Below are positions 610 through 64,000 of a stretch of DNA of 64,000 nt, in pieces. Origin of the DNA: Mobula hypostoma. Lineage: Eukaryota. Position 1 is the stretch's first letter. Each line of letters starts with the position of its first letter. The stretch covers positions 16,120,001 through 16,184,000 of the forward strand of contig NC_086114.1 in assembly GCF_963921235.1 (NCBI RefSeq), written 5' to 3'. Under the pieces are notes generated by a model. It had not been told where the DNA came from. It did not search any database and was given only the letters and a program-made list of their open reading frames with translations. Made by a program: the position numbers and the translations under genes.

Positions 610-820
610 GCTGAAGGAATTCAGCTGGTCAGGCAGCATCTGAGGTGGGAAACGGACAACTGACATTTCAGGTCAAGACGCTTCATCTGGTCCCTCCAGA
701 TGACAGGTCTCAACCCAAAACATCAACTGTCCATTTTCCTCCACAGATGCTGCCTGGCCAGCTGAGTTCTTCCAGCTCTTTATGTGTGGCTGCAGATTAC
801 AGCATCTGCAGTCTCTCGTG
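610..820. mobile_element. Head-to-head inverted Penelope-like tail (81-bp arms, 5-nt loop)
   Basis: 610-690 is the imperfect reverse complement of 696-776. Both arms carry decayed hammerhead and GATGCTGCCTG..GCTGAGTTC motifs. Confidence 0.75.
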
Positions 821-4000: not shown

Positions 4001-5934
4001 AAGTCCACTCAGCTGAAGAGTTAGTGATGGTGTCCAATGCTCCACAGAAGCCTTTCTTCAATCCACTTTGACACTGTAGCCTTCTGGCTCCCACCCCTCA
4101 TTTATCCAGCTATACCTTGTGAAAGCTCAACATTTCACCCCAAGTACTTTAGAAATGTTTCCACATGGTTCATATGTACTTCTACATGGGAAAAACAACT
4201 TTCATTTATGTGTAAAGCAAGATCCAACCATCAGCAATAAGGAATGAGGTCAAACACTGCATTTGGGTGCCGTTGATTGAGGGAGAAATGTTGGCCAAAG
4301 TGAAGGCATGTTCACCACTGATCCATGTGGTCCAGCAAAGGAGGAATGAAACACCTCACTGCCAAAGTGATAACTATTGCCAAGATGCACTTCCCAACCC
4401 AGTTTCTGAGCCCAGCAAGCTCTGAGAGAATCCAGGACATTCTGAAATGAGGCCAAGCATTCCAACTATTGATTGTCAAACCTCAACAGAGGTATGGGCA
4501 ATCTAGTGAGCAATTCAAAGTTTCCTCAAGGAAAACTTCCCAGTGAATTTGTTTCCACACCGCACTTTCCACAACCACTCGATGGCACGATGCACTTCCT
4601 AACGACAATGAAATTTACAATGAGTGTCATCACTGTTGAAAGCCAATTTGTGCATAGCTAGTTCCCACAAGTAGCAATGTGATAATCTGCACCGGGTGTT
4701 GGCAGGGGTCAGGACACTATGATAAAGTGCAAAGGAAAAAGACATAAATTGAGACTTATTGATCGTTAAAAGTAAAATAGTCTCACTCTCAAGGATTCTA
4801 CAACTCACGTTCTTCATTTTTTTTTATCTGCACAATTTGTCTTCTTTTGTACATTGATTGTCGGTCTTTGTTTATGTATAGCTTATTATCAGCAGTTTAA
4901 AATTTATGTATAAATTCTCAGAAATTATATATTTTTATTTGCACAATTTGTCTTCTTTTGCACATTAGTTGTTTGCCAGTCTTTGTTAATGTATAGCTTT
5001 TATCATAAATTCTATTGTATTTCTTTATTTTTCAATAAAAGAAAACTAATCTCAAAGTGGTGTACAGTAACCCACACATACCTTGATAATAAATTTACTT
5101 TGATTTTGACCTTGCCTCTCTTTGTAAGAATTGAATGCAAGATGCTTCCAATCAACTGTGCCCCCAATATTTCTTAAGCTCTATGGGGGCCAGGAGGCAA
5201 TTACCATATTTGAAAGGTAGAATCCCTGAGAATGCTGCGTCCTTAGTGCTGCTCTCGCGTGTCCTTTATCTGCTAACGGGAGTAAAACCTAAAGCCTTCT
5301 GAATCATAGGTGAGACCATATTTCAAACCTATACCCATCTCTGTAGTTAGAGGTCCTCCCCATTTACGAACACCTGTCAGCCCAAGCCTATGGAAGGCCA
5401 GTGGAAGGGAACCCTTCTGTCAACTGAACATGGCTTGTATTTGACAGGTTAAACATTCTAAGGTTTCTTCACTAGAGCATCACCCAAAAGAAACCCGACA
5501 CAGAAAATCACTCACACCTGGATTTGCTTCTCCATTTTACGACTGGATGCTTTAAATAAGTCTAAAATCCAACAGCAAGATGGGGAAAAAAAAGCAAGTT
5601 TTACTAGGCTTGAGAGGGGAAACGACATAAATCAATAAGCTACTTTGAACAACAAGATCAAAGTGAGTCTGGGGCAATTCCTCACATACCCAACAGCAGG
5701 ATAGAGAATGCGTGAAAAGGGGCTGGGTGGAAAAATCAGCATCATCTTAATATTTAAAGACACCATCATACTGCCAGATGTTTGAATGCGCTACAACAAT
5801 TGAGTGTAAAATTGGTAAATTGTTTATTATTTTCCCATGTATTGAGGTACAGTGAAAGACTTGTCCAGCATACCATTCATACAAATTCATTACAACAGTG
5901 CATTGAGGTGGTAAAAAAAATAACATATTACACA

Positions 5935-6436
5935 CACCTTATATTCCATCTGGGTAGCCTCCAACCTGATGGCATGAACATCGACTTCTCCAACTTCCGC
6001 TAATGCCCCACCTCCCCCTCGTACCCCATCCGTTATTTATTTTTATACACACGTTCTTTCTCTCACTCTCCTTTTTCTCCCTCTGTCCCTCTGACTGTAC
6101 CCCTTGCCCATCCTCTGGGTTTCCCCCCCCTTGTCTTTCTCCCCAGACCTCCTGTCCCATGATCCTCTCGTATCCCCTTTGCCAATCAGCTGTCCAGCTC
6201 TTGGCTCCATCCCTCCCCCTCCTGTCTTCTCCTATCATTTCGGATCTCCCCCTCCCCCCTCCCACTTTCAAATCTCTTACTAACTCTTCCTTCAGTTAGT
6301 CCTGACAAAGGGTCTCAGCCTGAAACGTCGACTGTACCTCTTCCTAGAGATGCTGCCTGGCCTGCTGTGTTCACCAGCAACTTTGATGTGTGTTGCTTGA
6401 ATTTCCAGCATCTGCAGAATTCCTGTTGTTTGTGTG
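5935..6436 (+). mobile_element. Penelope-like terminal-repeat monomer (hammerhead mutated to CTGACAA) with 13-bp TSD
   Basis: Starts with the GIY-YIG tail HLIFHLGSLQPDGMNIDFSNFR*, then CT-rich UTR, hammerhead 6298-6333 and 3' stem-loop. Flanked by AACATATTACACA at 5922-5934 and 6437-6449. Confidence 0.85.
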
Positions 6437-7812
6437 AACATATTACACAAACACAGAAAGGGCAGTGCAGGTAGACAATAAGGTACAAAGTACTGACATT
6501 TATCATGGAGGAGGCTACTATCAACTATTGCCAGCTTCAACTTGCCTCACATTTACAGAGTGGGTAAAGACAAAACCTGAGTGGTGTGTCTTTTTGAATA
6601 GATGATGAAACGTAAAACCTTGCTTGTTTTTGCCAGCTCTGAATGTATGAAGCTTTCTACTTCCTTTGTCACAGAAAATATTGTAAGACATTCACTCAGC
6701 AAACCCATCCAAAATAGTAAGTGTTTATTATAACCCTTGCACGTACACAATGAAGATGAGCTTTGTCACAAGCATATCGAAACATACAGTGAAATGTGTC
6801 ATTCTGTGTTAAATCTCATCAGCTTGAATTGCGCAGGGGGCTACTTGCCCCTTACTGCTTACTCCTCCTTCTGTTTTCTGTGTCTCTAATCGAGAAAGCT
6901 CAAGACCACAGGGTGAGTTAACAGTTGCATACAAACAGCTGTGAACTGTCAGCAGGTTTCCTGCCCCGAAAACGTTACCGAATCAGATGACATTTTATAC
7001 GTTTCCAGCTGCATGGCTTCCACCTCCGATACATGTTTATTTAATTTAATTTTAATTTGATTTTTATTTGGAGACTTGGTGCAGCGTAGTCCTTCCAGCC
7101 CAGCAACCCCTGACAACCCCGATTTAACCCTAGCCTAATCACAGGACATTTTACAATAACCAATTAAACTACCCAATACATCTTTGAACTGTGGGAGGAA
7201 ATCAGACCACCCAGGGAAATCACACGCCTTCCATGGGGAGGATGTACAGAGACTCCTTACGGAGCACGCCGGAATAAACTCTGAACTCCAACGCCCTGTG
7301 CTGTATTAGCGTCACGTTAACTGCTATGCTACCGTGGAGTACACGGTAATTAACTGATCTAAAATCCGCAGCTGCATTGGTGGGATTTGAACCGGATCAT
7401 TAAACCAGACCTCTGGCTAATGGGCCCACTAACAACCAATGTGCTATGCTGCCTCCAAACACAAATTCACAACTTTCCAACTCCGAATTGAGATTACAAC
7501 ACAGCAAGCTACGTTGTATTCCTCTGTCCCACTGTGAATTCCTGCTCTCTCTCTCCCCTTTTTTTCCCCTCTGTCCCTCTCACTATACCCCTTGCCCATC
7601 CTCTGGGCTTTTCTCCCTCTCCCCCTTTCTCCCTCTCCCCCTTTCTTCCTCTCCCCCTTTCTTTCTCCCTAGGCCTCCTGTCCCATGATCCTCTCATATC
7701 CCTTTTGCCAATCACCTGTCCAGCTCTTGGCTCCATCCCTCCCCCTCCTGTCTTCTCCTATCATTTTGGATCTCCCCCTCTCCCTCCCACTTTCAAATCT
7801 CTTCCTTCAGTT

Positions 7813-7848
7813 AGTCCTGACGAAGGGTCTCGGCCCGAAACGTTGACT
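7813..7848 (+). ncRNA. Minimal type I hammerhead ribozyme (intact core) in a Penelope-like terminal repeat
   Basis: AGTC-CTGACGA-A-GGG(TCTCGG)CCC-GAAAC-GTT-GACT: stem I AGTC/GACT, CUGANGA core, stem II, GAAA, palindromic ACGU helix III. Predicted cleavage after GUU (7844). Confidence 0.85.
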
Positions 7849-8206
7849 GTACCTCTTCCTAGAGATGCTGCCTGGCCTGCTGCGTTCACCAGCAACTTTG
7901 ATGTATGTTACCTTATATTCCCTCTGGGTAGCCTGATAGCATGAACATTGACTTCTCAAACTTATACACACATTCTTTCTCTCTCCCTCCTTTTTCTCCC
8001 CCTGTCCCTCTGACTATACCCCTTGCCCATCCTCTGGGTTCCCCCCGCCCCCGGTCTTTCTCCTTGGGCCTCCTGTCCCATGATCCTCTCACATCCCTTT
8101 TGCCTATCACCTGTCCAGCTCTTGGCTCTATCCCTCCCCCTCCTGTCTTCTCCTATCATTTTGGATCTCCCCTCTCCCTCCCACTTTCAAATCTCTTCCT
8201 TCAGTT

Positions 8207-8242
8207 AGTCCTGACGAAGGGTCTCGGCCCGAAACGTCGACT
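8207..8242 (+). ncRNA. Minimal type I hammerhead ribozyme (intact core)
   Basis: AGTC-CTGACGA-A-GGG(TCTCGG)CCC-GAAAC-GTC-GACT. Predicted cleavage after GUC (8238). Confidence 0.88.
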
Positions 8243-8447
8243 GTACCTCTTCCTAGAGATGCTGCCTGGCCTGCTGTGGTCACCAGCAACTTTGATGTGT
8301 GTTGCTTGAATTTCCAGCATCTGCAGGATTCCTCGTGTTTGCGGAAGCAAATGAATCTCAAGGTATTATATGGTGACGTATATGCTTTAATAATAAATTA
8401 ACTATGAACCTTGAAGTATCTTTGCGCTTGTTTTGTATAATCTCATA

Positions 8448-8920
8448 CATTCAGTAGCCACTTTAATAGGTACACCTGTACATTATTGCAAATATCTAAT
8501 CAACCAATCATGTGGCAGTAACTCGATGCATAAAAGCATGCAGACATGCTCAAGGTGGTCAGTTGTTGTTCAGACCAAAATCTCAAAATGAGGAAGAATG
8601 ACTTTGACTGTGGAATGATTGCTGGTACCAGATGGGATGGTCTGAGTATTTCAGAAACTGCTGATCTCCTGGGATTTTCATGCATGACAGTCTCTAGAGT
8701 TTGCAGGGAATGATGCCAGAAACAAAAAAAAATCCAGTGAACAGCAGTTCTGTGAATGAAAACATCTTGTGAATGAGAGAAATCAGAGTAGAATGTCCAG
8801 ACTGGTTCAAGCTGACAGGAAGGCAACAGCAACACAAATGTGTTACAACCATGGTCTGCAGAAGAGCATCTCTTAATGTCCAACCTTGAAGTGGATGGCT
8901 ACAGCAGAAGACCACAAACT
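8448..8920 (+). mobile_element. Tc1/mariner 5' fragment (same family as 12287)
   Basis: CATTCAGTAGCCACTTTAATAGGTACACCTG TIR plus transposase HTH remnant (ISETADLLGFS). Confidence 0.8.
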
Positions 8921-21609: not shown

Positions 21610-23015
21610 TTTATCGCTCATCCATTCCAGTAGCACGTTGAGCGGTGATGCTGGTTCACACTTCAGTGACCAAGGTTCAACCCTACACGCTACTGCTGTC
21701 TTTGCAGAGGTTGCACGTTTTCGCTGTGACGATGTTGGCTCTCTGCCTACTCTGGATCTTTTCATCTCTAATTGCTGGCGTGACACCTTCCCTGGTAACA
21801 CTCCCCAACTCTTCCTGCACTACACTGCTGACTACATCTGAGCTGCTTCATGCACCCATGCTGAGCTCATCAATTTCATCAAATCTGACACCTCTCTTCC
21901 CTTTCTCTATCTTTCTGTCTCCAGCTCTGGAGACAAACTGTCTACCAACATGTTTTATAAATCCAACAATTCCCAAAGCTATCTCTTCTTATTCTGTCTC
22001 CTATAAAAATACTATTCCATTTTCTCAGTTCCTCTGTCTCCACCACATCTGTTCCCAGGATGTGGGTTTCCTTTTCAGGACATCAGAGTTATATTTCTTC
22101 TTCAAAGGATGGGGTTTCCCTTCCTCCACCACTGACGCTGCCCTCTCTTGCTTCTCCTCCAGTTCCTGGACATGCGCGCTCACCCCATCTCCCCGCCAAA
22201 TTAACAGAGGCAGAGCTCCTCTTGTCCTCACCTACCACCCCATGAGGTTCCTCATCCAATCCACCATTCTCTACTTCTGCCATCTTCAATGAGATCCTAC
22301 CACCAAACACACCTTTACTACCCACCTCCCCCACACTCTGCTTTCCACAGGGATCACACCCTCCATGATGCCCTGTCCATTCGTCACCCCCCACTATCTC
22401 ACTCATAGCACATATCGGTGCAAGCAACAGAAATGTTGCACCTGCCCTTTCACCCCCCCCCACCCGCCTTACCTCCATTCTGGGCCTCAAACATCCTTCC
22501 AGGTGAGGCAACACTTCACTTGCCTTGTCACTCCATCTGTCAAAAGCACAATTTCCCAGTGGCCAAACATTTTAATTCCAATCCCCACACCCATTCCAAC
22601 ATGTCGGTCTATGGTCTCCTCTTTTGTCAGAACGCCACTCTCAGGATGGAGGAGCAACACCTCATATTTCGTCTGGGTAGCCTCCAACCTGATGGCATGA
22701 ACATTGATTTCCCCTTCCAGTATTTTTCCCCCTCCCCCTTCCCCACTCTGGCCTCTCACCCTCTTCTCCTCACCTATCACCCCTCCCTGGTGCCCCTCCT
22801 TCTTCCCTTTCCTCTCCTAACAGATTCCTTCTTCTCCAGCCCTTTACCTTTGCCACCCACCTGGTTTCACCTATCACCTTCTAGATAGTCCTCCTACCCC
22901 TCCCCCCACCTTTTTATTCCGGCATCTTCCCCCTTCCTTTCCAGTCCTGAAGAACAGTCTCACCCCAAACCATCAACAGTTTTATTCATTTCCATAGATG
23001 CTGCCTAACCTGTTA
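21610..23015 (+). mobile_element. Internally deleted, decayed Penelope-like retroelement (RT + GIY-YIG, Neptune-like) with terminal repeat
   Basis: Frameshifted pieces: FLHYTADYI (YIDD region), KNTIPFSQFLCLHHICS (PLE RT IP.SQFLRLRRICS), PLVLTYHP, Cys linker TYRCKQQKCCTCPF, FQVRQHFTC, PVAKHFNSNPH, EEQHLIFRLGSLQPDGMNIDF. Followed by a pyrimidine-rich UTR and a decayed hammerhead near 22945. Confidence 0.85.
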
Positions 23016-23469: not shown

Positions 23470-23870
23470 AGATTTTACAGATGCTGAAAGTCCTCAGCAG
23501 CACAAACAGAAGCTTGCTGCACAAACACTGCAAGTCAGGCAGCAGTCAACATTTTGGACTGAGACCCTCCATCAGGACCGGAAAGTAAGAGAGCAGGAGC
23601 CAGAATAAGGCTGCCGGGGGGGGGGGGGGGGGCGGAGGGTAAGGAGTACAAGCTGGCAGGTACGAAGTGAGACCAGTTGAGGGGGAAGGAGAGTGGGTGA
23701 AGGTGGATGAAGTAAGAAGCTGGGAGTGGATAGTTGGAAGACATAAAGGACTGAAGAAGGAATGTCCTAGGAGAGTGGACCATGGAAGTAAGGGAAGAAG
23801 GAGGGGAACCAAAGGGAGGTAATGACACAGCAAGAAATAAAGGAGTGAGAGGGTACCCAGTGCCAAAATT
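23470..23870 (-). mobile_element. Penelope-like terminal repeat, decayed
   Basis: Reverse complement of the CT-rich UTR, decayed hammerhead (23545-23578) and 3' stem. Confidence 0.65.
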
Positions 23871-30359: not shown

Positions 30360-31390
30360 ACAAACACACAAAATGCTGGAGGAACTCAATGGGCCAGACA
30401 GCATCGACAGAAAAGAGTAAACAGTCGACGTTTCAGGCCGAGACCCGTCATCAGGATTGGAAAGGAACGGGAGAAGTCAGAGTAAGAGGTGAGGGGAGTG
30501 GACGAAGTAGTACAAGGTGACCGGGCGGGGGGGGGGGGGGTGAAGTAAAGAGCAAGGAACTTGATTGGTGAAAGAGATAAAGGGCTGGAGGAAGGGGGAT
30601 CTGATAGCTGAGGATGGAAGACCATGGAAGAAAGAAGGGAGAGAAGCACCAAATGGAGGTGATGGGCAGGTAGGGAGATAGGGTGATCGGGGAAAACAGG
30701 AATGGGGCATGGTGAAGGTGGGGGGAGCAATTACCAGAAGTTTGAGAAATCTATGTTGATGCCATCAGGTTGGAGGCTAGCAATCAACCAATCAACTTCC
30801 CAGCTTACCTGCCCATCACCTCCCTCTGGTGCTCCTCCCCCTTCCCTCTCTTCCATGGCCTGCTGAGTTCCTCCAGTATTTTGTGTGTGTTGCTTTGGAT
30901 TTCCAGCATCTGCAGATTTTCTTGTGTTAGGGAGGTTATCACCTTACTTTGGTTCTCTTCTTCCTTCTATGGATTCCTCCAATAGATTACATTTTCTTCA
31001 GTCTTTTACCTCTTCCACCTATCACCTCCCAGCTTCTTACTTCATTCCCCCTCTCCCACCCAACTTCCCATCTCACCTAATCTCACCTATTACCTGCCAG
31101 CTTGTACTCCTTCCCTCCCCTACCTTCTTATTCTGTCTTCTGCCCCTTCATTTCCAGTTCTGATGAAGGGTTTCAGCCCAAAACTTCAACTTATTCCTCT
31201 CCATTGTCTGACTTGCTGAGTTTCTTCAGCATTTTGTGTGCATTGCTGGAGCATTTAAGCGTAACTACGTAAATAAAGTTTGTAAATTCCCGATGAAGGG
31301 TCTCAGCCTGAAACATTGATTGTTTTTTCCCTTCTATAGAGGCTGCCTGAATTGTTGAGTTCCTCCAGTATTTTGTGTGTGTTACGCCAC
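30360..31390. mobile_element. Cluster of Penelope-like repeats (minus monomer 30360-30785 followed by plus-strand fragments)
   Basis: Hammerhead at 30423-30458 (-), GIY-YIG tail near 30735-30780 (-), decayed plus-strand hammerheads at 31160 and 31290. Confidence 0.75.
30423..30458 (-). ncRNA. Minimal hammerhead ribozyme, near intact
   Basis: Minus strand AATC-CTGATGA-C-GGG(TCTCGG)CCT-GAAAC-GTC-GACT; one stem I mismatch and a G-U pair in stem II. Confidence 0.65.
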
Positions 31391-34600: not shown

Positions 34601-35139
34601 GTAATTTGATTTATTTGAATGCACAGAGTGGTCCTGACAAAGGGTCTTGGCCTGAAACATTGACTCTTTATTCCTAGGTGCTGCCTGACCTGTGTGAGTT
34701 CTTCCAGCATTTTGTGTGTGTTACTCTGGATTTCCAGCATCTGCAGAATGTCGTGTGTTTTTGAAGTGCCTGGAAATGGCTTCCAGGGGTGGTGAGAGTA
34801 GAAGCAGACAGGCATTTAGACAGATACATGAAGGGATTGGAGGGATATGGATCCTGTGCAGGCAAATGGGATTCATTTCATTGGGCATCATGGTTGGCGT
34901 GGGTATTGTGGGCTGAAGGGCCTGTTCCTGTACTATACTGTTCCACATAACCACAGTGCTTATCTGCTGATGAATTGATATTCAGAATCAACTAAATTTA
35001 ACCTTTTTACTAACACTATGGATCAGCATTTGTCACTTCTGCTCAGCTGTGAAAAACTGAGCTTGCTGGGGGACATGGTAGCACACGATTGACGTTGATT
35101 AGCAAGTGGGTTGTAGCTCTCGTGATGACAGTGGCTTAA

Positions 35140-49040: not shown

Positions 49041-49264
49041 CCTGCCAAACTAGTTTTCTATCATCTTACCTGAGAGTTTCTTAAATTCCTCTAAACACCC
49101 TGGCAGGGTGCTACTCATAACACCCTGTAAAAACATACCTCTGACAACCCCCCTATACTTTCCTCCAATCACCTTAAAAATATAACCCCTGCTAAAAGAC
49201 ATTTCCACCCTGGGAAAAGGACTCTGGCTATCCACTCGATCTTTGCCTCATCACTTTTTACACC

Positions 49265-49755
49265 TCTGCCTCTCTCACTATACTCCTTGCCCATCCTCTG
49301 GGCTTCCCCCCTCCCCCTTTCTTTCTCCCTAGGCCTCCTGTCCTATGACCTTCTCATATCCCTTTTGCCAATCAATTGTCCAGCTCTTGGCTCCATCCCT
49401 CCCCCTCCTGTCTTCTCCTATCATTTTGGATATCCCCCTCCCCCTTTCAAATCTTTCTACCTCTTCTTTCAGTTAGTCCTGATGAAGGGTCTCAGCCCAA
49501 AACGTCGACTGTACCTCTTCCTAGAGATGCTGCCTGGCCTGCTGTGTTCACCAGCAACTCTGATGTGTGTTGCTTCACCTATCACCTTCTAGTTTGTACT
49601 CCTTCCCCTCTTCCCACCTTCTTATTCTGGCTTCTTCCCTCTTCCTCTCCAGTCCTGATGGAAGAGTCTCGACCTAACACGTCGCCTTTTTATTCCTTTC
49701 TATAAATGCTGTCTGACCTGCTGGGCATCTTCAGAATTTTGTGTTTGTTATTCCA
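49265..49755 (+). mobile_element. Penelope-like repeats with two decayed hammerheads
   Basis: AGTCCTGATGAAGGGTCTCAGCCCAAAACGTCGACT at 49475-49510 (G12 lost) and a more decayed copy at 49651. Confidence 0.75.
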
Positions 49756-60016: not shown

Positions 60017-61494
60017 CACAGAAATTATTGTTGAGATTGAGCACGTAGTGTAAAGATGTTTCTCTTGACATCTTAAAACAATGGGTCGGTTATTCAAAAA
60101 AAATAAGAAGTTTCTTCGTATAGAGAGTGGTGACTCTTTAGAAAGCCAAGGACGAGGGAGGGACTTGAGTGTCATACAGCACAGAAACAGGCCCTTCTGG
60201 CCCAATGAACCCCGCCACCCAATATAACACCTGTATGATCAATCAACGGGCTAACCTGTAGACTTTGGAACGTGGGAGGAAACAAGAGCCCCAGAAGGAA
60301 ACCCACATAGTCATGGGGGAAAGAACGTACCAACTCCACGCAGACAGCAGCGGGATTGAACCCAGGTTGTCGGTGCTGTGATAGCATTACGTGGACCGCT
60401 ACGGTACCACGACGCACTTCGTTCTCATCCGACCCCCGTCAGAATCCACCGCTCACAAATCACCACAGGCAACCGACACACTGACTCGCGCACCTTTGAG
60501 ATGTGGGAGGAAGCCCGTGCGGTTGCAGGGGAAACATGCAAGCACCAGAGAGAGACAGCGCCACAGATTGGGGCGCGAGGCGCCAGCGCCACCCGCCACG
60601 CCAGTTACCCAATTCCGTTCAAAAAGAAACAGAATGACTGTTAAACACAAGATGCACCGAGGCCTACGTGCTCAGAGCAGGAAGTGACACAGAGGTAAAA
60701 GTTCAGCCACCATCCTGTTACAGGGCAGAACAGGATTGAGGGACCAAATGAGCAACTCCTGCCCTTTTGCACTCTGATTGACCAGAGGTCAGAGGAGAAC
60801 TAGGCCAGTCTGCTCTGCTGTTCCATCATAGCTGATGTATTTTCCCTCTCAGCCCCATTCTCTTGCCTTCTTCCTGTAACCTTTGATACCCTTTCTAATC
60901 GAGAACCTATCAACCTCTGCTTATAGACATTGATTTGGCCTCCACAGCCATCTATGGCAATGAAATCCACAGATTAGCCACCCTACAGCGAAAGAAACTC
61001 CTCATCTCTATTGTAAAAGAATCTTTGTATTCTGAGGCTGTACACTCGATCCCAGACTCTTCCACTGTTGGGAACATCCTCTCTTCTTGGGCCTTTCAAT
61101 AGATTTCTATGAGATCTGTCCACCTCCATTTGCAGCTCAACATGACTAGTATCCACAAAAATGACTGTAAGAACATCCACAATTCCGACTGTACTTCACC
61201 CAATCAACCTGGTTGGCACCCCCGCAGTTCATTTGATAGCTGTCATGTACTTTCTGTTCCTGTAACACAATATTCTGCAGGCTTTTATATTTACTCCCTC
61301 AAACAGAAAGATCTATCTTCATTGGATAAACAAAAAAAAGCTTTCCACTGTATCTGGGTGCATAATAACCAATTACCTAGTTTGACTAAGGCAAATTTGA
61401 AGATTAGCAAAACTATTTCAGACTGAATTCCTACCTTTAACTAAAAAGGTAAAAGTATGATTCAAATTCTGTGCTGCTGTTAGTGATGAAGCCT

Positions 61495-63580
61495 GAAGAG
61501 GGGGGTGGGAGGGGGCCGCAGGGGGAGGGGATGAGTGGTCCATGGGGGGTGGGAAGGAGGCTGCAAGGTCGTTCAGGAGTGGGAGTGGGGCAAGTGGTCT
61601 TTGGAGGGGGGGGAGGGGGAGAGGGAGATGGGGCATGAGGTCGCGGGGAGAGAGGGTGCGCCTGAGGGGGGCACAGGGAGAGGGGAGAGGGGGCATGGGG
61701 AAGAGGGGCCGAGGGGACGCGGGCGAAGATGGGCCGAGGGGGAAGAGGGGAGGGGAGCAAAGGCTTGGTGTGAGGTAGAGGGGGAGGAGAGAGTGGGTAT
61801 GGGGGAGAGGGGGAGGAGAGAGTGGATTTGGGGAGAGGGTGGGAGGAGGAAGGGGGGTTGGGTGGTGAGGAGGGTGAGAGGGTTGAGGAGGGGTGGGGGT
61901 TGTAAGGCAAGTGGGTAAGTAGAGAGGAGAGAGGGAGTGGATACAGAGGGGAGAGAGGAGGAGAGAAGGGGAGTGGGGAAGGTGAGGTTTGGAGGAGGAG
62001 GAGGGGTTCAAGAAGTCAGGAGAGAGATGAAAGAGTGGGTTGGGGAGACAGGGTAGGAGATGAAGGTGAGGAAGAGGAGGAGGATTGGGTGAAAGAGGGA
62101 GANNNNNNNNNNNNNNNNNNNNNNNNNNNNNNNNNNNNNNNNNNNNNNNNNNNNNNNNNNNNNNNNNNNNNNNNNNNNNNNNNNNNNNNNNNNNNNNNNN
62201 NNNNNNNNNNNNNNNNNNNNNNNNNNNNNNNNNNNNNNNNNNNNNNNNNNNNNNNNNNNNNNNNNNNNNNNNNNNNNNNNNNNNNNNNNNNNNNNNNNNN
62301 NNNNNNNNNNNNNNNNNNNNNNNNNNNNNNNNNNNNNNNNNNNNNNNNNNNNNNNNNNNNNNNNNNNNNNNNNNNNNNNNNNNNNNNNNNNNNNNNNNNN
62401 NNNNNNNNNNNNNNNNNNNNNNNGGGAGAGAGTGGGGGTGAGAGAGGGAGAGAGGAAGGGAGGGAGGGAGGGGGGGTGAGAGAGGGAGGGAGGGAGGGAG
62501 GGAGTGGGGGTGAGAGAGAGGGAGGGAGGGAGGGAGTGGGGGTGAGAGAGGGAGGGAGGGAGGGAGTGGGGGTGAGAGAGGGACGGAGGGGGGGTGAGAG
62601 AGGNNNNNNNNNNNNNNNNNNNNNNNNNNNNNNNNNNNNNNNNNNNNNNNNNNNNNNNNNNNNNNNNNNNNNNNNNNNNNNNNNNNNNNNNNNNNNNNNN
62701 NNNNNNNNNNNNNNNNNNNNNNNNNNNNNNNNNNNNNNNNNNNNNNNNNNNNNNNNNNNNNNNNNNNNNNNNNNNNNNNNNNNNNNNNNNNNNNNNNNNN
62801 NNNNNNNNNGGGGTGAGAGAGGGAGGGGTGAGAGAGGGAGGGGTGAGAGAGGGAGGGGTGAGAGAGGGAGGGAGGGGTGAGAGAGGGAGGGAGGGGTGAG
62901 AGAGGGAGGGAGGGAGGGAGGGAGAGAGTGGGGGTGAGAGAGGGAGGGAGTGGGGGTGAGAGAGGGACGGAGGGAGGGAGGGAGTGGGGGTGAGAGAGGG
63001 ACGGAGGGAGGGAGGTGAGAGAGGGACGGAGGGAGGGTGAGAGTGGGGGTGAGAGAGGGACGGAGGGAGGGTGAGAGTGGGGGCGTGAGAGGGAGAGGGG
63101 GGCGTGAGGGAGGGAGAGGGGGAGAGGGGGGCGTGAGGGAGGGAGGGAGAGAGTGGGGGTGAGAGAGGGAGGGAGAGAGAGTGGGGTGAGAGAGGGAGGG
63201 AGAGGGGGAGAGTGAGGGAGGGAGGGAGAGAGTGGGGGTGAGAGAGGGAGGGAGAGAGTGGGGGTGAGAGAGGGAGGGAGGGAGAGAGTGGGGGTGAGAG
63301 AGGGAGGGAGGGAGAGAGTGGGGGTGAGAGAGGGAGGGAGGGAGAGAGTGGGGGTAAGAGAGGGAGGGAGAGGGGGAGAGTGAGGGAGGGAGGGAGAGAG
63401 TGGGGGTGAGAGAGGGAGGGAGGGAGAGAGTGGGGGTGAGAGAGGGAGGGAGAGGGGAGAGGGGGGGCGTGAGGGAGGGAGGGAGAGAGTGGGGGTGAGA
63501 GAGTGAGGGAGGGAGAGAGCGGGGGTGAGAGAGGGAGGGGGGGAGAGGGGGAGAGGGGGCGTGAGGGAGGGGGGAAGTGC
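61495..63580. repeat. Polypurine G/A-rich low-complexity and simple tandem repeat with two assembly gaps
   Basis: Units such as GGGGGTGAGAGAGGGAGGGAGGGAGAGAGT; N runs at 62103-62423 and 62604-62809. Confidence 0.95.
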
Positions 63581-64000
63581 GGAGTGAAAGCATGAACGTG
63601 AAAGCAGATTGAGGGAAAGCGGAGGGGATTTGTGAGAGGGAAGGATATGAGTCAAGATCCGTGTGGGGAAGAATTCGAGAAGGGAAGACAGTGCGAGTTA
63701 AAGATAGACGGAAAGAAGTGGGAATGCAGCTTTGTGAAACCCAACTCTCTTCTGCCAGAGGCAATTAGCGATTCGCTCTCAGATCCAACATCACCAACAC
63801 AAACCTGTTCGGTCGAACCCTGTTAATTTTCACGAGAAGTTTTCCTGCAAGCGAAACATGTTATTTTTAAACACGTTTCACAGTATATGCAACATCGCTG
63901 TACTCCTACCCTGGTCTGAAGATTAGACAAGGAACCGGCTGCAAACAACGGGAGGAAGAATCACCAACTCAACACATTTTGATCACACTTTTGTTTGGAA

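What the first reader, a model, noticed from the sequence alone, without database searches (positions are those of the whole stretch)
7813..8242. Tandem pair of intact hammerhead ribozymes 394 nt apart: candidate elasmobranch retrozyme or circular RNA
Seen: two intact minimal type I hammerheads in direct repeat, with predicted cleavage after 7844 (GUU) and 8238 (GUC). Helix III is only the palindrome ACGU. Known: Penelope-like elements carry minimal hammerheads with palindromic helix III that cleave as dimers, and metazoan retrozymes are tandem hammerhead repeats that release monomers which circularise. Inference: a plus-strand transcript (antisense to ARID3B) could form the dimeric ribozyme and excise a 394-nt non-coding monomer (7845-8238) able to circularise and be retrotransposed by the parent PLE. 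I am not aware of a characterised shark or ray example but cannot check the literature.
Basis: partly seen in the sequence, partly recalled or inferred. Interest (0 to 1): 0.85.

Follow-up and report, generated by a model that had tools for sequence, protein, structure and literature searches.

The report
Tandem Penelope-element tails with hammerhead ribozymes
The two hammerhead ribozyme motifs are real, but they are the standard minimal ribozymes carried in the 3' end of a hugely abundant Penelope-like retrotransposon, here inserted as an ordinary head-to-tail partial tandem, so this is a known kind of element rather than a newly discovered shark circular RNA.

Summary
Observation confirmed. 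Two identical 27-nt hammerhead cores lie at 7817-7843 and 8211-8237 (+), 394 nt apart. Each has a complete catalytic core, a 5-bp helix I, a 4-bp helix II and only ACGU as helix III. Predicted cleavage is after 7844 and 8238.

Interpretation partly supported.
- The motif is the min-HHR of Penelope-like elements (PLEs): 20 copies, mostly CpG-decayed, lie in this 64-kb window.
- Each lies about 300 nt downstream of the end of a PLE ORF. Homologues of a longer copy in the window carry RVT_1 plus a C-terminal GIY-YIG domain.
- The pair is a 5'-truncated partial tandem. Unit 1 (7546-7909) ends at the inner reverse-transcription start and lacks the ~40-nt PLE "tail". Unit 2 (7910-8341) keeps the tail.
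- That tail lies outside the ribozyme-to-ribozyme monomer, so the locus was not copied from a 394-nt circle.
- The monomer folds no better than shuffled sequence. No RNA evidence was obtainable.
- The same junction occurs in roughly 30 genomic copies, so a small retrozyme-like mini-PLE lineage is not excluded.

PLE min-HHRs (2014) and vertebrate retrozymes, including one chondrichthyan (2026 preprint), are already described. First readers of this scan noted similar tandem pairs elsewhere in this genome. Verdict: a new member of a known kind, of low interest.

The parts
7546..7909 (+). Unit 1: a 5'-truncated copy of the PLE 3' UTR (matches positions 125-460 of reference copy A). It ends at ...GATGTATGTT and lacks the terminal ~40-nt tail.
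   Evidence: blastn against copy A; alignment A1
7610..7662 (+). 16-nt microsatellite (3.3 copies) expanded inside unit 1; absent from the other copies.
   Evidence: TRF; alignment A1
7812..7849 (+). Hammerhead 1 (min-HHR, type I): helix I 7812-7816/7845-7849, core 7817-7823, extra A 7824, helix II 7825-7836, GAA 7837-7839, ACGU 7840-7843, U17 7844. Predicted cleavage 7844|7845.
7910..8341 (+). Unit 2: a PLE 3'-end copy starting 22 codons before the PLE stop (the same start as copy A). It has 7-nt and ~46-nt internal deletions and a complete tail.
7910..7963 (+). Frameshifted remnant of the last codons of the PLE GIY-YIG endonuclease ORF (...SMNIDFSN).
8206..8243 (+). Hammerhead 2, identical to hammerhead 1 except C17 (8238). 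Predicted cleavage 8238|8239.
8304..8341 (+). PLE 'tail' (~38 nt, GCTTGAATTTCC...GTGTTTG), present only at the 3' end of the whole insertion. It lies outside the ribozyme-to-ribozyme monomer.
   Evidence: the tail concept comes from PMC8557442 and PMC11167929
7845..8238 (+). Hypothetical 394-nt monomer between the two cleavage sites.
   Evidence: Derived from the two cleavage sites. Fold MFE -62.8 kcal/mol, z +0.54 against shuffles.
5935..6436 (+). Reference solo copy A of the same subfamily (502 bp). It holds the last 22 PLE codons, a stop, the 3' UTR, a decayed HHR and the tail, and is flanked by the 13-bp TSD AACATATTACACA (5922-5934 / 6437-6449).
21640..23010 (+). Longer decayed PLE copy (RT-EN linker, EN end, 3' UTR, decayed HHR), used to establish the PLE identity of the family.
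49229..49575 (+). Copy D of the same subfamily. It also ends tail-less and directly abuts a 5'-truncated tail of another PLE subfamily that has its own decayed HHR (about 49640-49680).

Best explanation
The locus is a partial head-to-tail tandem (pseudo-LTR-type arrangement) of two 5'-truncated 3' ends of a canonical endonuclease-positive Penelope-like element. Each end carries the element's own minimal type I hammerhead in its 3' UTR.

How the locus was made (inferred from anatomy plus published PLE biochemistry):
- The PLE RT/GIY-YIG protein nicked the target and reverse-transcribed linear PLE RNA from one of two start sites about 40 nt apart near the RNA 3' end.
- Unit 2 was copied from the outer start site and keeps the tail. 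Unit 1 ends at the inner start site and has no tail.
- The two units became joined in one of two ways. Either the RT reached a preferred 5' end 22 codons before the ORF stop and switched to the inner start site of a second RNA, or one copy inserted into the tail of an earlier copy, which the PLE endonuclease recognises.

What the ribozymes could do (inferred, not shown):
- In a + strand transcript covering both units, the ACGU tetranucleotides of the two motifs could pair into a 4-bp intermolecular-type helix III.
- That would give a double hammerhead cutting after U7844 and C8238 and releasing a 394-nt RNA with 5'-OH and 2',3'-cyclic phosphate ends that a cellular ligase could circularise.
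- Published work on PLE min-HHRs indicates this cleavage is weak, protein-assisted and not needed for insertion.

The most likely present status of this copy is a relatively young, neutrally evolving insertion relic rather than a dedicated circular-RNA gene.
For: - Motif and spacing exact.
- All traits listed for PLE min-HHRs are present: a nucleotide between 9 and 10.1, G10.1-C11.1, a 4-5 bp helix I, and palindromic 15.2-16.2 without loop 3 (against PMC4209133).
- The family has 20 copies in 64 kb. Only 5 keep an intact core, and the changes are mostly CG>TG/CA.
- PLE identity: window 22005-22289 hits 170 proteins. The long hits have RVT_1 followed by a C-terminal GIY-YIG. The C-terminus of P0002 aligns with window 22418-22720 (69% identity, E 2e-21) and with the first 22 codons of copy A (E 5e-8).
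- Alignment A1 and blastn: unit 1 covers q125-460, unit 2 covers q1-498, and the tail is present only at the far 3' end. Copy D also ends tail-less and abuts another PLE tail.
- This matches the published PLE hallmarks: 5' truncation, partial tandems, a 30-40-bp tail at one end, an HHR in the pLTR (PMC8557442), and two RT start sites that bracket the tail (PMC11167929).
- The units are 96% identical over 247 nt.
- Read laying: about 156,000 DNA contigs of one run hit the stretch and depth rises towards the 3' end. At 7909 most copies continue into the tail instead of the junction.
Against: - No target-site duplication was found around the tandem as a whole.
- The junction 7909|7910 is not unique. 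At least 8 distinct DNA contigs bridge it, amounting to roughly 30 copy-equivalents. Copy A starts at the same nucleotide. This could mean a defined ~460-500-nt non-autonomous unit that multiplies as a tandem, which is what a retrozyme lineage would look like.
- Both ribozymes are the least decayed in the window. That is expected for a young insertion but is also compatible with selection.
- Transcription, cleavage and circularisation could not be tested. All available runs are contigs, and their RNA status is a guess.
Confidence: 0.75

Rival explanations
1. It is a genuine metazoan-type non-LTR retrozyme dimer. On this view a defined ~400-460-nt non-coding derivative of the PLE pseudo-LTR is transcribed, self-cleaves as a double hammerhead, circularises, and is copied back into the genome by PLE reverse transcriptase. 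This locus would be an active or recently active member.
For: - Two complete HHRs lie in direct repeat at a retrozyme-typical spacing.
- It meets the operational criterion of the 2026 preprint: at least 2 consecutive units with complete canonical or minimal HHRs.
- The same preprint reports chondrichthyan retrozymes with a mean consensus of 363 bp and derives retrozymes from PLE pLTRs.
- The junction recurs in about 30 copies and in a second organism.
- Copy A and unit 2 share the same 5' end.
- First readers noted other same-strand HHR pairs 332 and 404 nt apart elsewhere in this genome (unchecked).
Against: - The HHR is the minimal PLE type, not the canonical type I with loop-loop contacts that defines the retrozymes of PMC7229834.
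- The 3' tail of the locus is outside the monomer, so the locus cannot be a rolling-circle cDNA.
- There are only 1.9 units, and TRF does not call a repeat.
- The junction-bearing copies are about 0.04% of the 3' segment copies.
- Spacings differ between loci (332, 394, 404), as expected from variable truncation.
- The monomer is unstructured (z +0.54).
- No junction contig appears in the putative RNA runs.
- The predicted inactive fold pairing GACG of the core with CGUC at the cleavage site is more stable than the hammerhead-like monomer fold (-14.1 against -9.5 kcal/mol).
Confidence: 0.17
2. It is a post-insertion tandem duplication. A single 5'-truncated PLE copy was partly duplicated later by unequal crossing-over or replication slippage, unrelated to retrotransposition.
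For: The units are 96% identical. Satellite birth from PLE termini by unequal crossover is discussed in the 2026 preprint.
Against: - The ORF-end 'head' lies in the middle, not at the left end, so an extra deletion would have to be assumed.
- The junction falls exactly at the known inner RT start and tail boundary. The same boundary is used in copy D, which abuts a different subfamily.
- The identical junction recurs at many loci, which a one-off local duplication does not predict.
Confidence: 0.06
3. It is a chance match to a loose hammerhead descriptor with no ribozyme ancestry.
For: The bare descriptor CUGANGA-N6-30-GAAA also hits about 5 unrelated places in the window. Rfam finds nothing.
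Against: None is expected in shuffles for the 27-mer. The motif is conserved across diverged PLE subfamilies at a fixed distance from the ORF stop, with all min-HHR accessory traits (PMC4209133).
Confidence: 0.02

Closest known systems
Minimal hammerhead ribozymes (min-HHRs) in the pseudo-LTRs of metazoan Penelope-like elements (Cervera & de la Pena 2014, PMC4209133)
   Same: It has the same core and the same extra nucleotide between A9 and G10.1. It also shares G10.1-C11.1, a short open helix I, and no loop 3, with palindromic 15.2-16.2 implying dimer action. It lies in the PLE terminal non-coding region. It is massively abundant, mostly as solitary motifs in truncated copies.
   Different: Helix II is 4 bp with a tetraloop rather than the 6-8 bp often seen in Schistosoma or Drosophila PLEs. 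The host is an elasmobranch, which that paper did not list. N7 is C in this subfamily, which allows an alternative GACG:CGUC pairing.
Canonical EN+ PLE insertion architecture (Neptune/Poseidon/Penelope clades; Craig et al. 2021 PMC8557442; Frangieh et al. 2024 PMC11167929)
   Same: It shows 5' truncation, a partial head-to-tail tandem forming a pseudo-LTR, a 30-40-bp tail at one end only that corresponds to two RT start sites, and an RT plus C-terminal GIY-YIG ORF in family members.
   Different: Both units here are severely truncated. No RT/EN ORF lies between the repeats, so the repeat spacing is 394 nt instead of about 3 kb.
Metazoan non-LTR retrozymes (Cervera & de la Pena 2020 PMC7229834; Li, Clavereau & Pollet 2026 preprint 10.64898/2026.07.22.740005)
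   Same: It has short tandem units of a few hundred nt, each with a type I hammerhead that needs a second copy to cleave, and a proposed dependence on PLE machinery. The preprint derives retrozymes from PLE pLTRs and reports them in one chondrichthyan.
   Different: It has only about 1.9 units, a minimal rather than canonical HHR, and a remnant of the PLE ORF end inside the unit. The canonical PLE 3' tail is present. The RNA is GC-rich (~0.5), pyrimidine-skewed and unstructured, not a low-GC self-paired repeat. No RNA evidence exists.

Membership tests
Hammerhead ribozyme, minimal type I PLE variant (min-HHR) | Conserved core C3 U4 G5 A6 N7 G8 A9 / G12 A13 A14 / A15.1-U16.1 / H17 | tested here: met
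   Both copies have CUGACGA...GAA-ACGU-U/C.
Hammerhead ribozyme, minimal type I PLE variant (min-HHR) | [quoted passage not shown] | tested here: met
   A7824 and A8218 are unpaired. Helix II is GGGU/GCCC with a CUCG loop. The trait is listed in PMC4209133.
Hammerhead ribozyme, minimal type I PLE variant (min-HHR) | Short open helix I (4-5 bp), and no helix III hairpin but a palindromic 15.2-16.2 | tested here: met
   Helix I is UAGUC/GACUG, 5 bp including one U-G pair. Helix III is ACGU only. The double-hammerhead pairing is nested and evaluates to -17.6 kcal/mol.
Hammerhead ribozyme, minimal type I PLE variant (min-HHR) | Match to the Rfam hammerhead covariance models | tested here: not met
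   No hit at gathering score or at E<=10. This is expected, because those models require helix III and loop features that min-HHRs lack.
Hammerhead ribozyme, minimal type I PLE variant (min-HHR) | Site-specific self-cleavage | not testable with these tools
   It needs in vitro transcription of monomer and dimer constructs. Only contig-level run data were available.
Penelope-like element (canonical EN+) | Single ORF with a reverse transcriptase followed by a C-terminal GIY-YIG endonuclease | tested here: met
   Met for the family, not for this locus. The longer copy at 21640-23010 matches proteins with RVT_1 then GIY-YIG. The locus itself keeps only a frameshifted remnant of the last codons.
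Penelope-like element (canonical EN+) | 5'-truncated copies in partial tandem (pseudo-LTR) with a 30-40-bp tail at one end only | tested here: met
   Unit 1 covers q125-460 without the tail. Unit 2 covers q1-498 with a ~38-nt tail. The feature is described in PMC8557442 and PMC11167929.
Penelope-like element (canonical EN+) | Target-site duplication | tested here: inconclusive
   Solo copy A has a 13-bp TSD. None was found around the tandem.
Metazoan non-LTR retrozyme | Tandem repeat of 150-450-bp units, at least 2 units, each with a complete HHR | tested here: met
   Two complete HHRs lie 394 nt apart. There are only about 1.9 units, and TRF does not call a repeat.
Metazoan non-LTR retrozyme | Canonical type I HHR with loop 1-loop 2 tertiary contacts (PMC7229834) | tested here: not met
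   Helix I is open with no loop 1, and the motif is of the minimal PLE type. The 2026 preprint's looser criterion also accepts minimal HHRs.
Metazoan non-LTR retrozyme | Units propagate as such: arrays of whole units, copied from unit-length (circular) RNA | tested here: not met
   The tail at 8304-8341 lies outside the monomer. The family consists mostly of solitary 5'-truncated copies with rising 3' depth. The junction is present in only about 0.04% of 3' segment copies, though it recurs about 30 times.
Metazoan non-LTR retrozyme | Expression as unit-length linear and circular RNA | not testable with these tools
   No raw RNA reads were available. No junction-bearing contig appears in the putative RNA runs X10 and X17. 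That is weak negative evidence only.

The most novel reading that the evidence does not exclude
The ~460-nt segment from 22 codons before the PLE stop to the inner RT start site may be a defined non-autonomous 'mini-Penelope'. On this reading it concatenates head-to-tail, giving roughly 30 junction-bearing copies in at least two elasmobranch genomes. It would be an early-stage retrozyme lineage built on a minimal hammerhead rather than a canonical one. Dimers such as this locus would then release ~400-nt linear or circular RNAs in vivo with the help of PLE protein.
Probability: 0.15. Interest if true: 0.45.

Novelty: new member of a known kind. Interest (0 to 1): 0.22.

Why it matters
If the ordinary reading holds, the value is mainly in annotation. 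It documents that elasmobranch genomes carry tens of thousands of PLE-derived min-HHRs, and that close same-strand pairs of them arise routinely from the PLE insertion mechanism. Such pairs should therefore not be scored individually as candidate circular-RNA genes.

The one point of wider interest is the recurrent, nucleotide-exact junction between the tail-less 3' end and a fixed 5' end. That is the kind of intermediate predicted by the recent proposal that animal retrozymes are born from PLE pseudo-LTRs. A slowly evolving shark genome with many such copies would be a good place to test the proposal.

Tried and rejected
- Rfam cmscan of the whole window at gathering score, and of 7400-8600 at E<=10, found nothing.
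- TRF found only the internal microsatellite, not the 394-nt repeat.
- Pfam on six long mechanical ORFs, and on the decayed EN and linker pieces, gave no meaningful hits. One sub-threshold UL16 match was disregarded.
- The ESM Atlas look-up of the EN piece gave no usable hit.
- The word-indexed protein search with the 215-aa ORF gave no hit, because half of that ORF is out of frame and the search has a length filter. The exhaustive search with the clean 95-aa piece then succeeded.
- The idea that the flank upstream of unit 1 is a third tail fragment was rejected. The local alignment score of 18 is within the shuffle range of 14.1 +/- 2.3, maximum 25.
- The TSD search around the tandem found nothing convincing.
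- A search for ARID or REKLES peptide motifs, to confirm the ARID3B context, found none in the window.
- The search for raw RNA-seq reads found only contig-level runs whose RNA status is a guess, so molecule ends, strand and back-junctions could not be examined.
- The supplements of the 2026 preprint that are held do not name the chondrichthyan species.
- Thermodynamic folding does not recover the catalytic fold. The MFE structures are an inactive monomer fold and an extended duplex dimer. This is usual for hammerheads and was not taken as evidence against the motif.

Full report
**Observation**

The + strand carries the identical 27-mer CTGACGAAGGGTCTCGGCCCGAAACGT at 7817-7843 and 8211-8237, 394 nt apart. 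None is expected in 100 dinucleotide-preserving shuffles.

Read against hammerhead numbering, each copy has:
- a 5-bp helix I, UAGUC/GACUG;
- the C3-A9 box, CUGACGA;
- one unpaired A;
- a 4-bp helix II, GGGU/GCCC, closed by CUCG;
- G12A13A14;
- A15.1-C-G-U16.1 with no loop 3;
- H17, which is U7844 in copy 1 and C8238 in copy 2.

Rfam finds nothing at gathering score over the window, nor at E<=10 over 7400-8600. This fits a motif that lacks the helix III hairpin and the loops the Rfam models expect.

**The motif belongs to a very abundant repeat**

A fuzzy scan finds 20 copies of the 33-nt core in the 64-kb window, on both strands.
- Only five keep an intact catalytic core.
- Only three keep the core, both helices and the palindrome: the two copies of the finding and one at 30454 on the minus strand.
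- The changes are dominated by CG>TG/CA, meaning copies decay neutrally after insertion.
- The two copies of the finding are the least decayed, with 2 and 1 differences from the family consensus.

Laying contigs of public runs on 7400-8500 gave about 156,000 matching contigs in one DNA run and thousands in runs guessed to be RNA. Depth rises towards the 3' end, and the flanks are single-copy at depth about 15. Parts of the stretch are held by runs from many coded organisms.

**The repeat is the 3' end of a Penelope-like element (PLE)**

Each copy lies about 300 nt downstream of the end of an ORF, for example ...HLIFHLGSLQPDGMNIDFSNFR* at 5935-6003.

A longer, frameshifted copy at 21640-23010 extends further into the ORF.
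- A clean 95-aa piece of it (22005-22289) hits 170 proteins in the exhaustive representative search.
- The long hits (P0053, P0082, P0096, P0115, P0069) carry Pfam RVT_1 followed by a C-terminal GIY-YIG domain. That is the defining architecture of canonical EN+ PLEs (PMC8557442).
- The C-terminus of hit P0002 aligns with the ORF end of the window copies: 69% identity and E 2e-21 for 22418-22720, and E 5e-8 for the first 22 codons of copy A.

Cervera & de la Pena (PMC4209133) describe exactly this ribozyme type in PLE pseudo-LTRs. They list a nucleotide between 9 and 10.1, G10.1-C11.1, a helix I of 4-5 bp, and palindromic 15.2-16.2 without loop 3. They predict action as a dimer and report low activity in vitro. 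All the sequence traits are met here.

**Anatomy of the pair**

Copy A (5935-6436) is a 502-bp solo copy flanked by a 13-bp target-site duplication. Using it as the yardstick:
- Unit 1 (7546-7909) corresponds to positions 125-460. It ends at ...GATGTATGTT and lacks the last ~40 nt.
- Unit 2 (7910-8341) starts at position 1-2, the same nucleotide as copy A and 22 codons before the PLE stop. It runs to position 498 including the terminal ~38-nt tail, and has 7-nt and ~46-nt internal deletions.
- Unit 1 also carries an expanded 16-nt microsatellite.

The units are 96% identical over 247 aligned nt.

This is the published PLE insertion signature. It combines heavy 5' truncation, partial tandems forming pseudo-LTRs, and a 30-40-bp tail at only one end of the insertion unit (PMC8557442). 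The tail corresponds to the stretch between two adjacent reverse-transcription start sites (PMC11167929).

The same tail-less end is seen in copy D (49229-49575). That copy directly abuts a 5'-truncated tail of a different PLE subfamily with its own decayed hammerhead. Head-to-tail stacking at this boundary is therefore a property of the element, not of a particular 394-nt unit.

Other close arrangements in the window:
- same-strand pairs on the minus strand at 23575/24019 and 56028/56766, and on the plus strand at 31160/31290;
- an inverted pair at 689/697.

**Product or source of circles?**

The tail 8304-8341 lies downstream of the second cleavage site and is not part of the 7845-8238 monomer. 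A cDNA made by rolling-circle copying of a 394-nt circle could not contain it. The locus was therefore made from linear PLE RNA with a canonical 3' end.

Whether the locus is now a source of circles could not be tested. All retrievable runs are contig-level and their RNA status is a guess.

Indirect evidence is unfavourable:
- The monomer is strongly pyrimidine-skewed, with GC skew -0.45 to -0.75 through its body.
- It folds no better than shuffles: -62.8 kcal/mol, z +0.54.
- No contig of the putative RNA runs crosses the unit junction, although the 3' segment is abundantly represented.
- In this subfamily N7 is C, which allows an inactive pairing of GACG in the core with CGUC/CGUU at the cleavage site. 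That fold is predicted to be more stable (-12.5 and -14.1 kcal/mol for copies 1 and 2) than the helix I plus helix II fold (-9.5 kcal/mol).
- The double-hammerhead pairing is sterically consistent and evaluates to -17.6 kcal/mol.

Published work points the same way. PLE min-HHRs cleave weakly and only as dimers (PMC4209133). An Anolis PLE hammerhead is protein-assisted and dispensable for insertion in vitro, and it left no reads ending at the cleavage site in RNA-seq (PMC11167929).

**An unresolved point that keeps a more interesting reading alive**

The junction 7909|7910 is not unique.
- In DNA run X1, at least eight distinct contigs bridge it with 0-4 differences. The exact match has single-copy-like depth.
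- The summed depth across the junction is about 460 against about 15 for the unique flank, which suggests roughly 30 copies.
- A second organism also has bridging contigs.
- This is only about 0.04% of the ~1.1 million summed depth of the adjacent 3' segment.

Still, a nucleotide-exact recurrent junction, together with copy A starting at the same nucleotide, implies a preferred 5' end 22 codons before the stop. Two explanations remain open:
- the RT repeatedly switches from that 5' end to the inner RT start of a second RNA;
- a small lineage descends from one tandem master.

The second is what the 2026 preprint by Li, Clavereau and Pollet proposes for the birth of animal retrozymes from PLE pseudo-LTRs. 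By that preprint's operational rule, this locus would count as an 'active retrozyme' if its tandem-repeat finder detected it. TRF, as run here, did not. By the narrower definition of PMC7229834, which requires canonical type I hammerheads and distinguishes them from the minimal PLE variants, it does not qualify.

**Comparison with what is known, and novelty**

- PLE min-HHRs have been known since 2014 in fishes, coelacanth, amphibians and reptiles.
- The partial-tandem and tail architecture of PLEs is well described.
- Vertebrate non-LTR retrozymes, including in one chondrichthyan genome (mean consensus 363 bp), are reported in a 2026 preprint.
- First-stage readers of this scan noted similar items on other pieces of the same genome. 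These include same-strand hammerhead pairs 404 and 332 nt apart, ~500-bp and ~100-bp hammerhead-bearing Penelope derivatives, and copy A in this window. I verified only copy A and, in part, the short and ~500-bp forms within this window.

The finding is thus a correct observation of a known kind of element in a new host lineage.

**Verdict**

- Real hammerhead motifs, as an ordinary PLE partial tandem: confidence 0.75.
- Genuine retrozyme-like activity is possible but unsupported: about 0.15-0.17.
- Novelty: new member of a known kind. Interest: 0.22.

Noticed in passing
window 5922-6449: Solo 502-bp copy of the same PLE subfamily, holding the last 22 ORF codons, the 3' UTR, a CpG-decayed hammerhead and the tail. 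It is flanked by a perfect 13-bp target-site duplication, AACATATTACACA. It starts at the same nucleotide as unit 2 of the tandem.
   Followed up: yes
window 21640-23010 (+): Longer, frameshifted PLE fragment holding the RT motif C region, the RT-EN linker, the Cys-rich linker, the EN end, the 3' UTR and a decayed hammerhead near 22940. Its 95-aa clean piece retrieves RT + GIY-YIG proteins.
   Followed up: yes
window 49229-49740 (+): Compound insertion: a tail-less copy of the finding's subfamily directly abuts a 5'-truncated 3' UTR of a second PLE subfamily. This places two decayed hammerheads about 175 nt apart.
   Followed up: partly
window 31160-31383 (+), 34631-34763 (+), 689-729 (both strands): Very short copies of about 100-135 nt consist of little more than the hammerhead plus the PLE terminus. 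Two lie 130 nt apart in tandem, one is nested in another repeat, and one pair is inverted back-to-back at 689/697. This matches the inverted 5'-truncated arrangement described for PLEs.
   Followed up: partly
window 7909|7910, via public runs X1 and X3: The exact tail-less-end to ORF-end junction recurs in at least 8 distinct DNA contigs, about 30 copy-equivalents, and in a second organism. This implies a preferred 5' end 22 codons before the PLE stop.
   Followed up: partly
window 7060-7400: Immediately upstream of the tandem lies another interspersed repeat that looks like a SINE (it contains ...CTGTGGGAGGAAATCAGA...). It was not analysed.
   Followed up: no
window 62103-62423 and 62604-62809: Two runs of N. 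The 745-aa and 582-aa mechanical ORFs on the minus strand at 61418-63764 span them, and the one scanned (745 aa) has no Pfam match, so they are most likely artefacts of the N runs.
   Followed up: partly
   Followed up: partly
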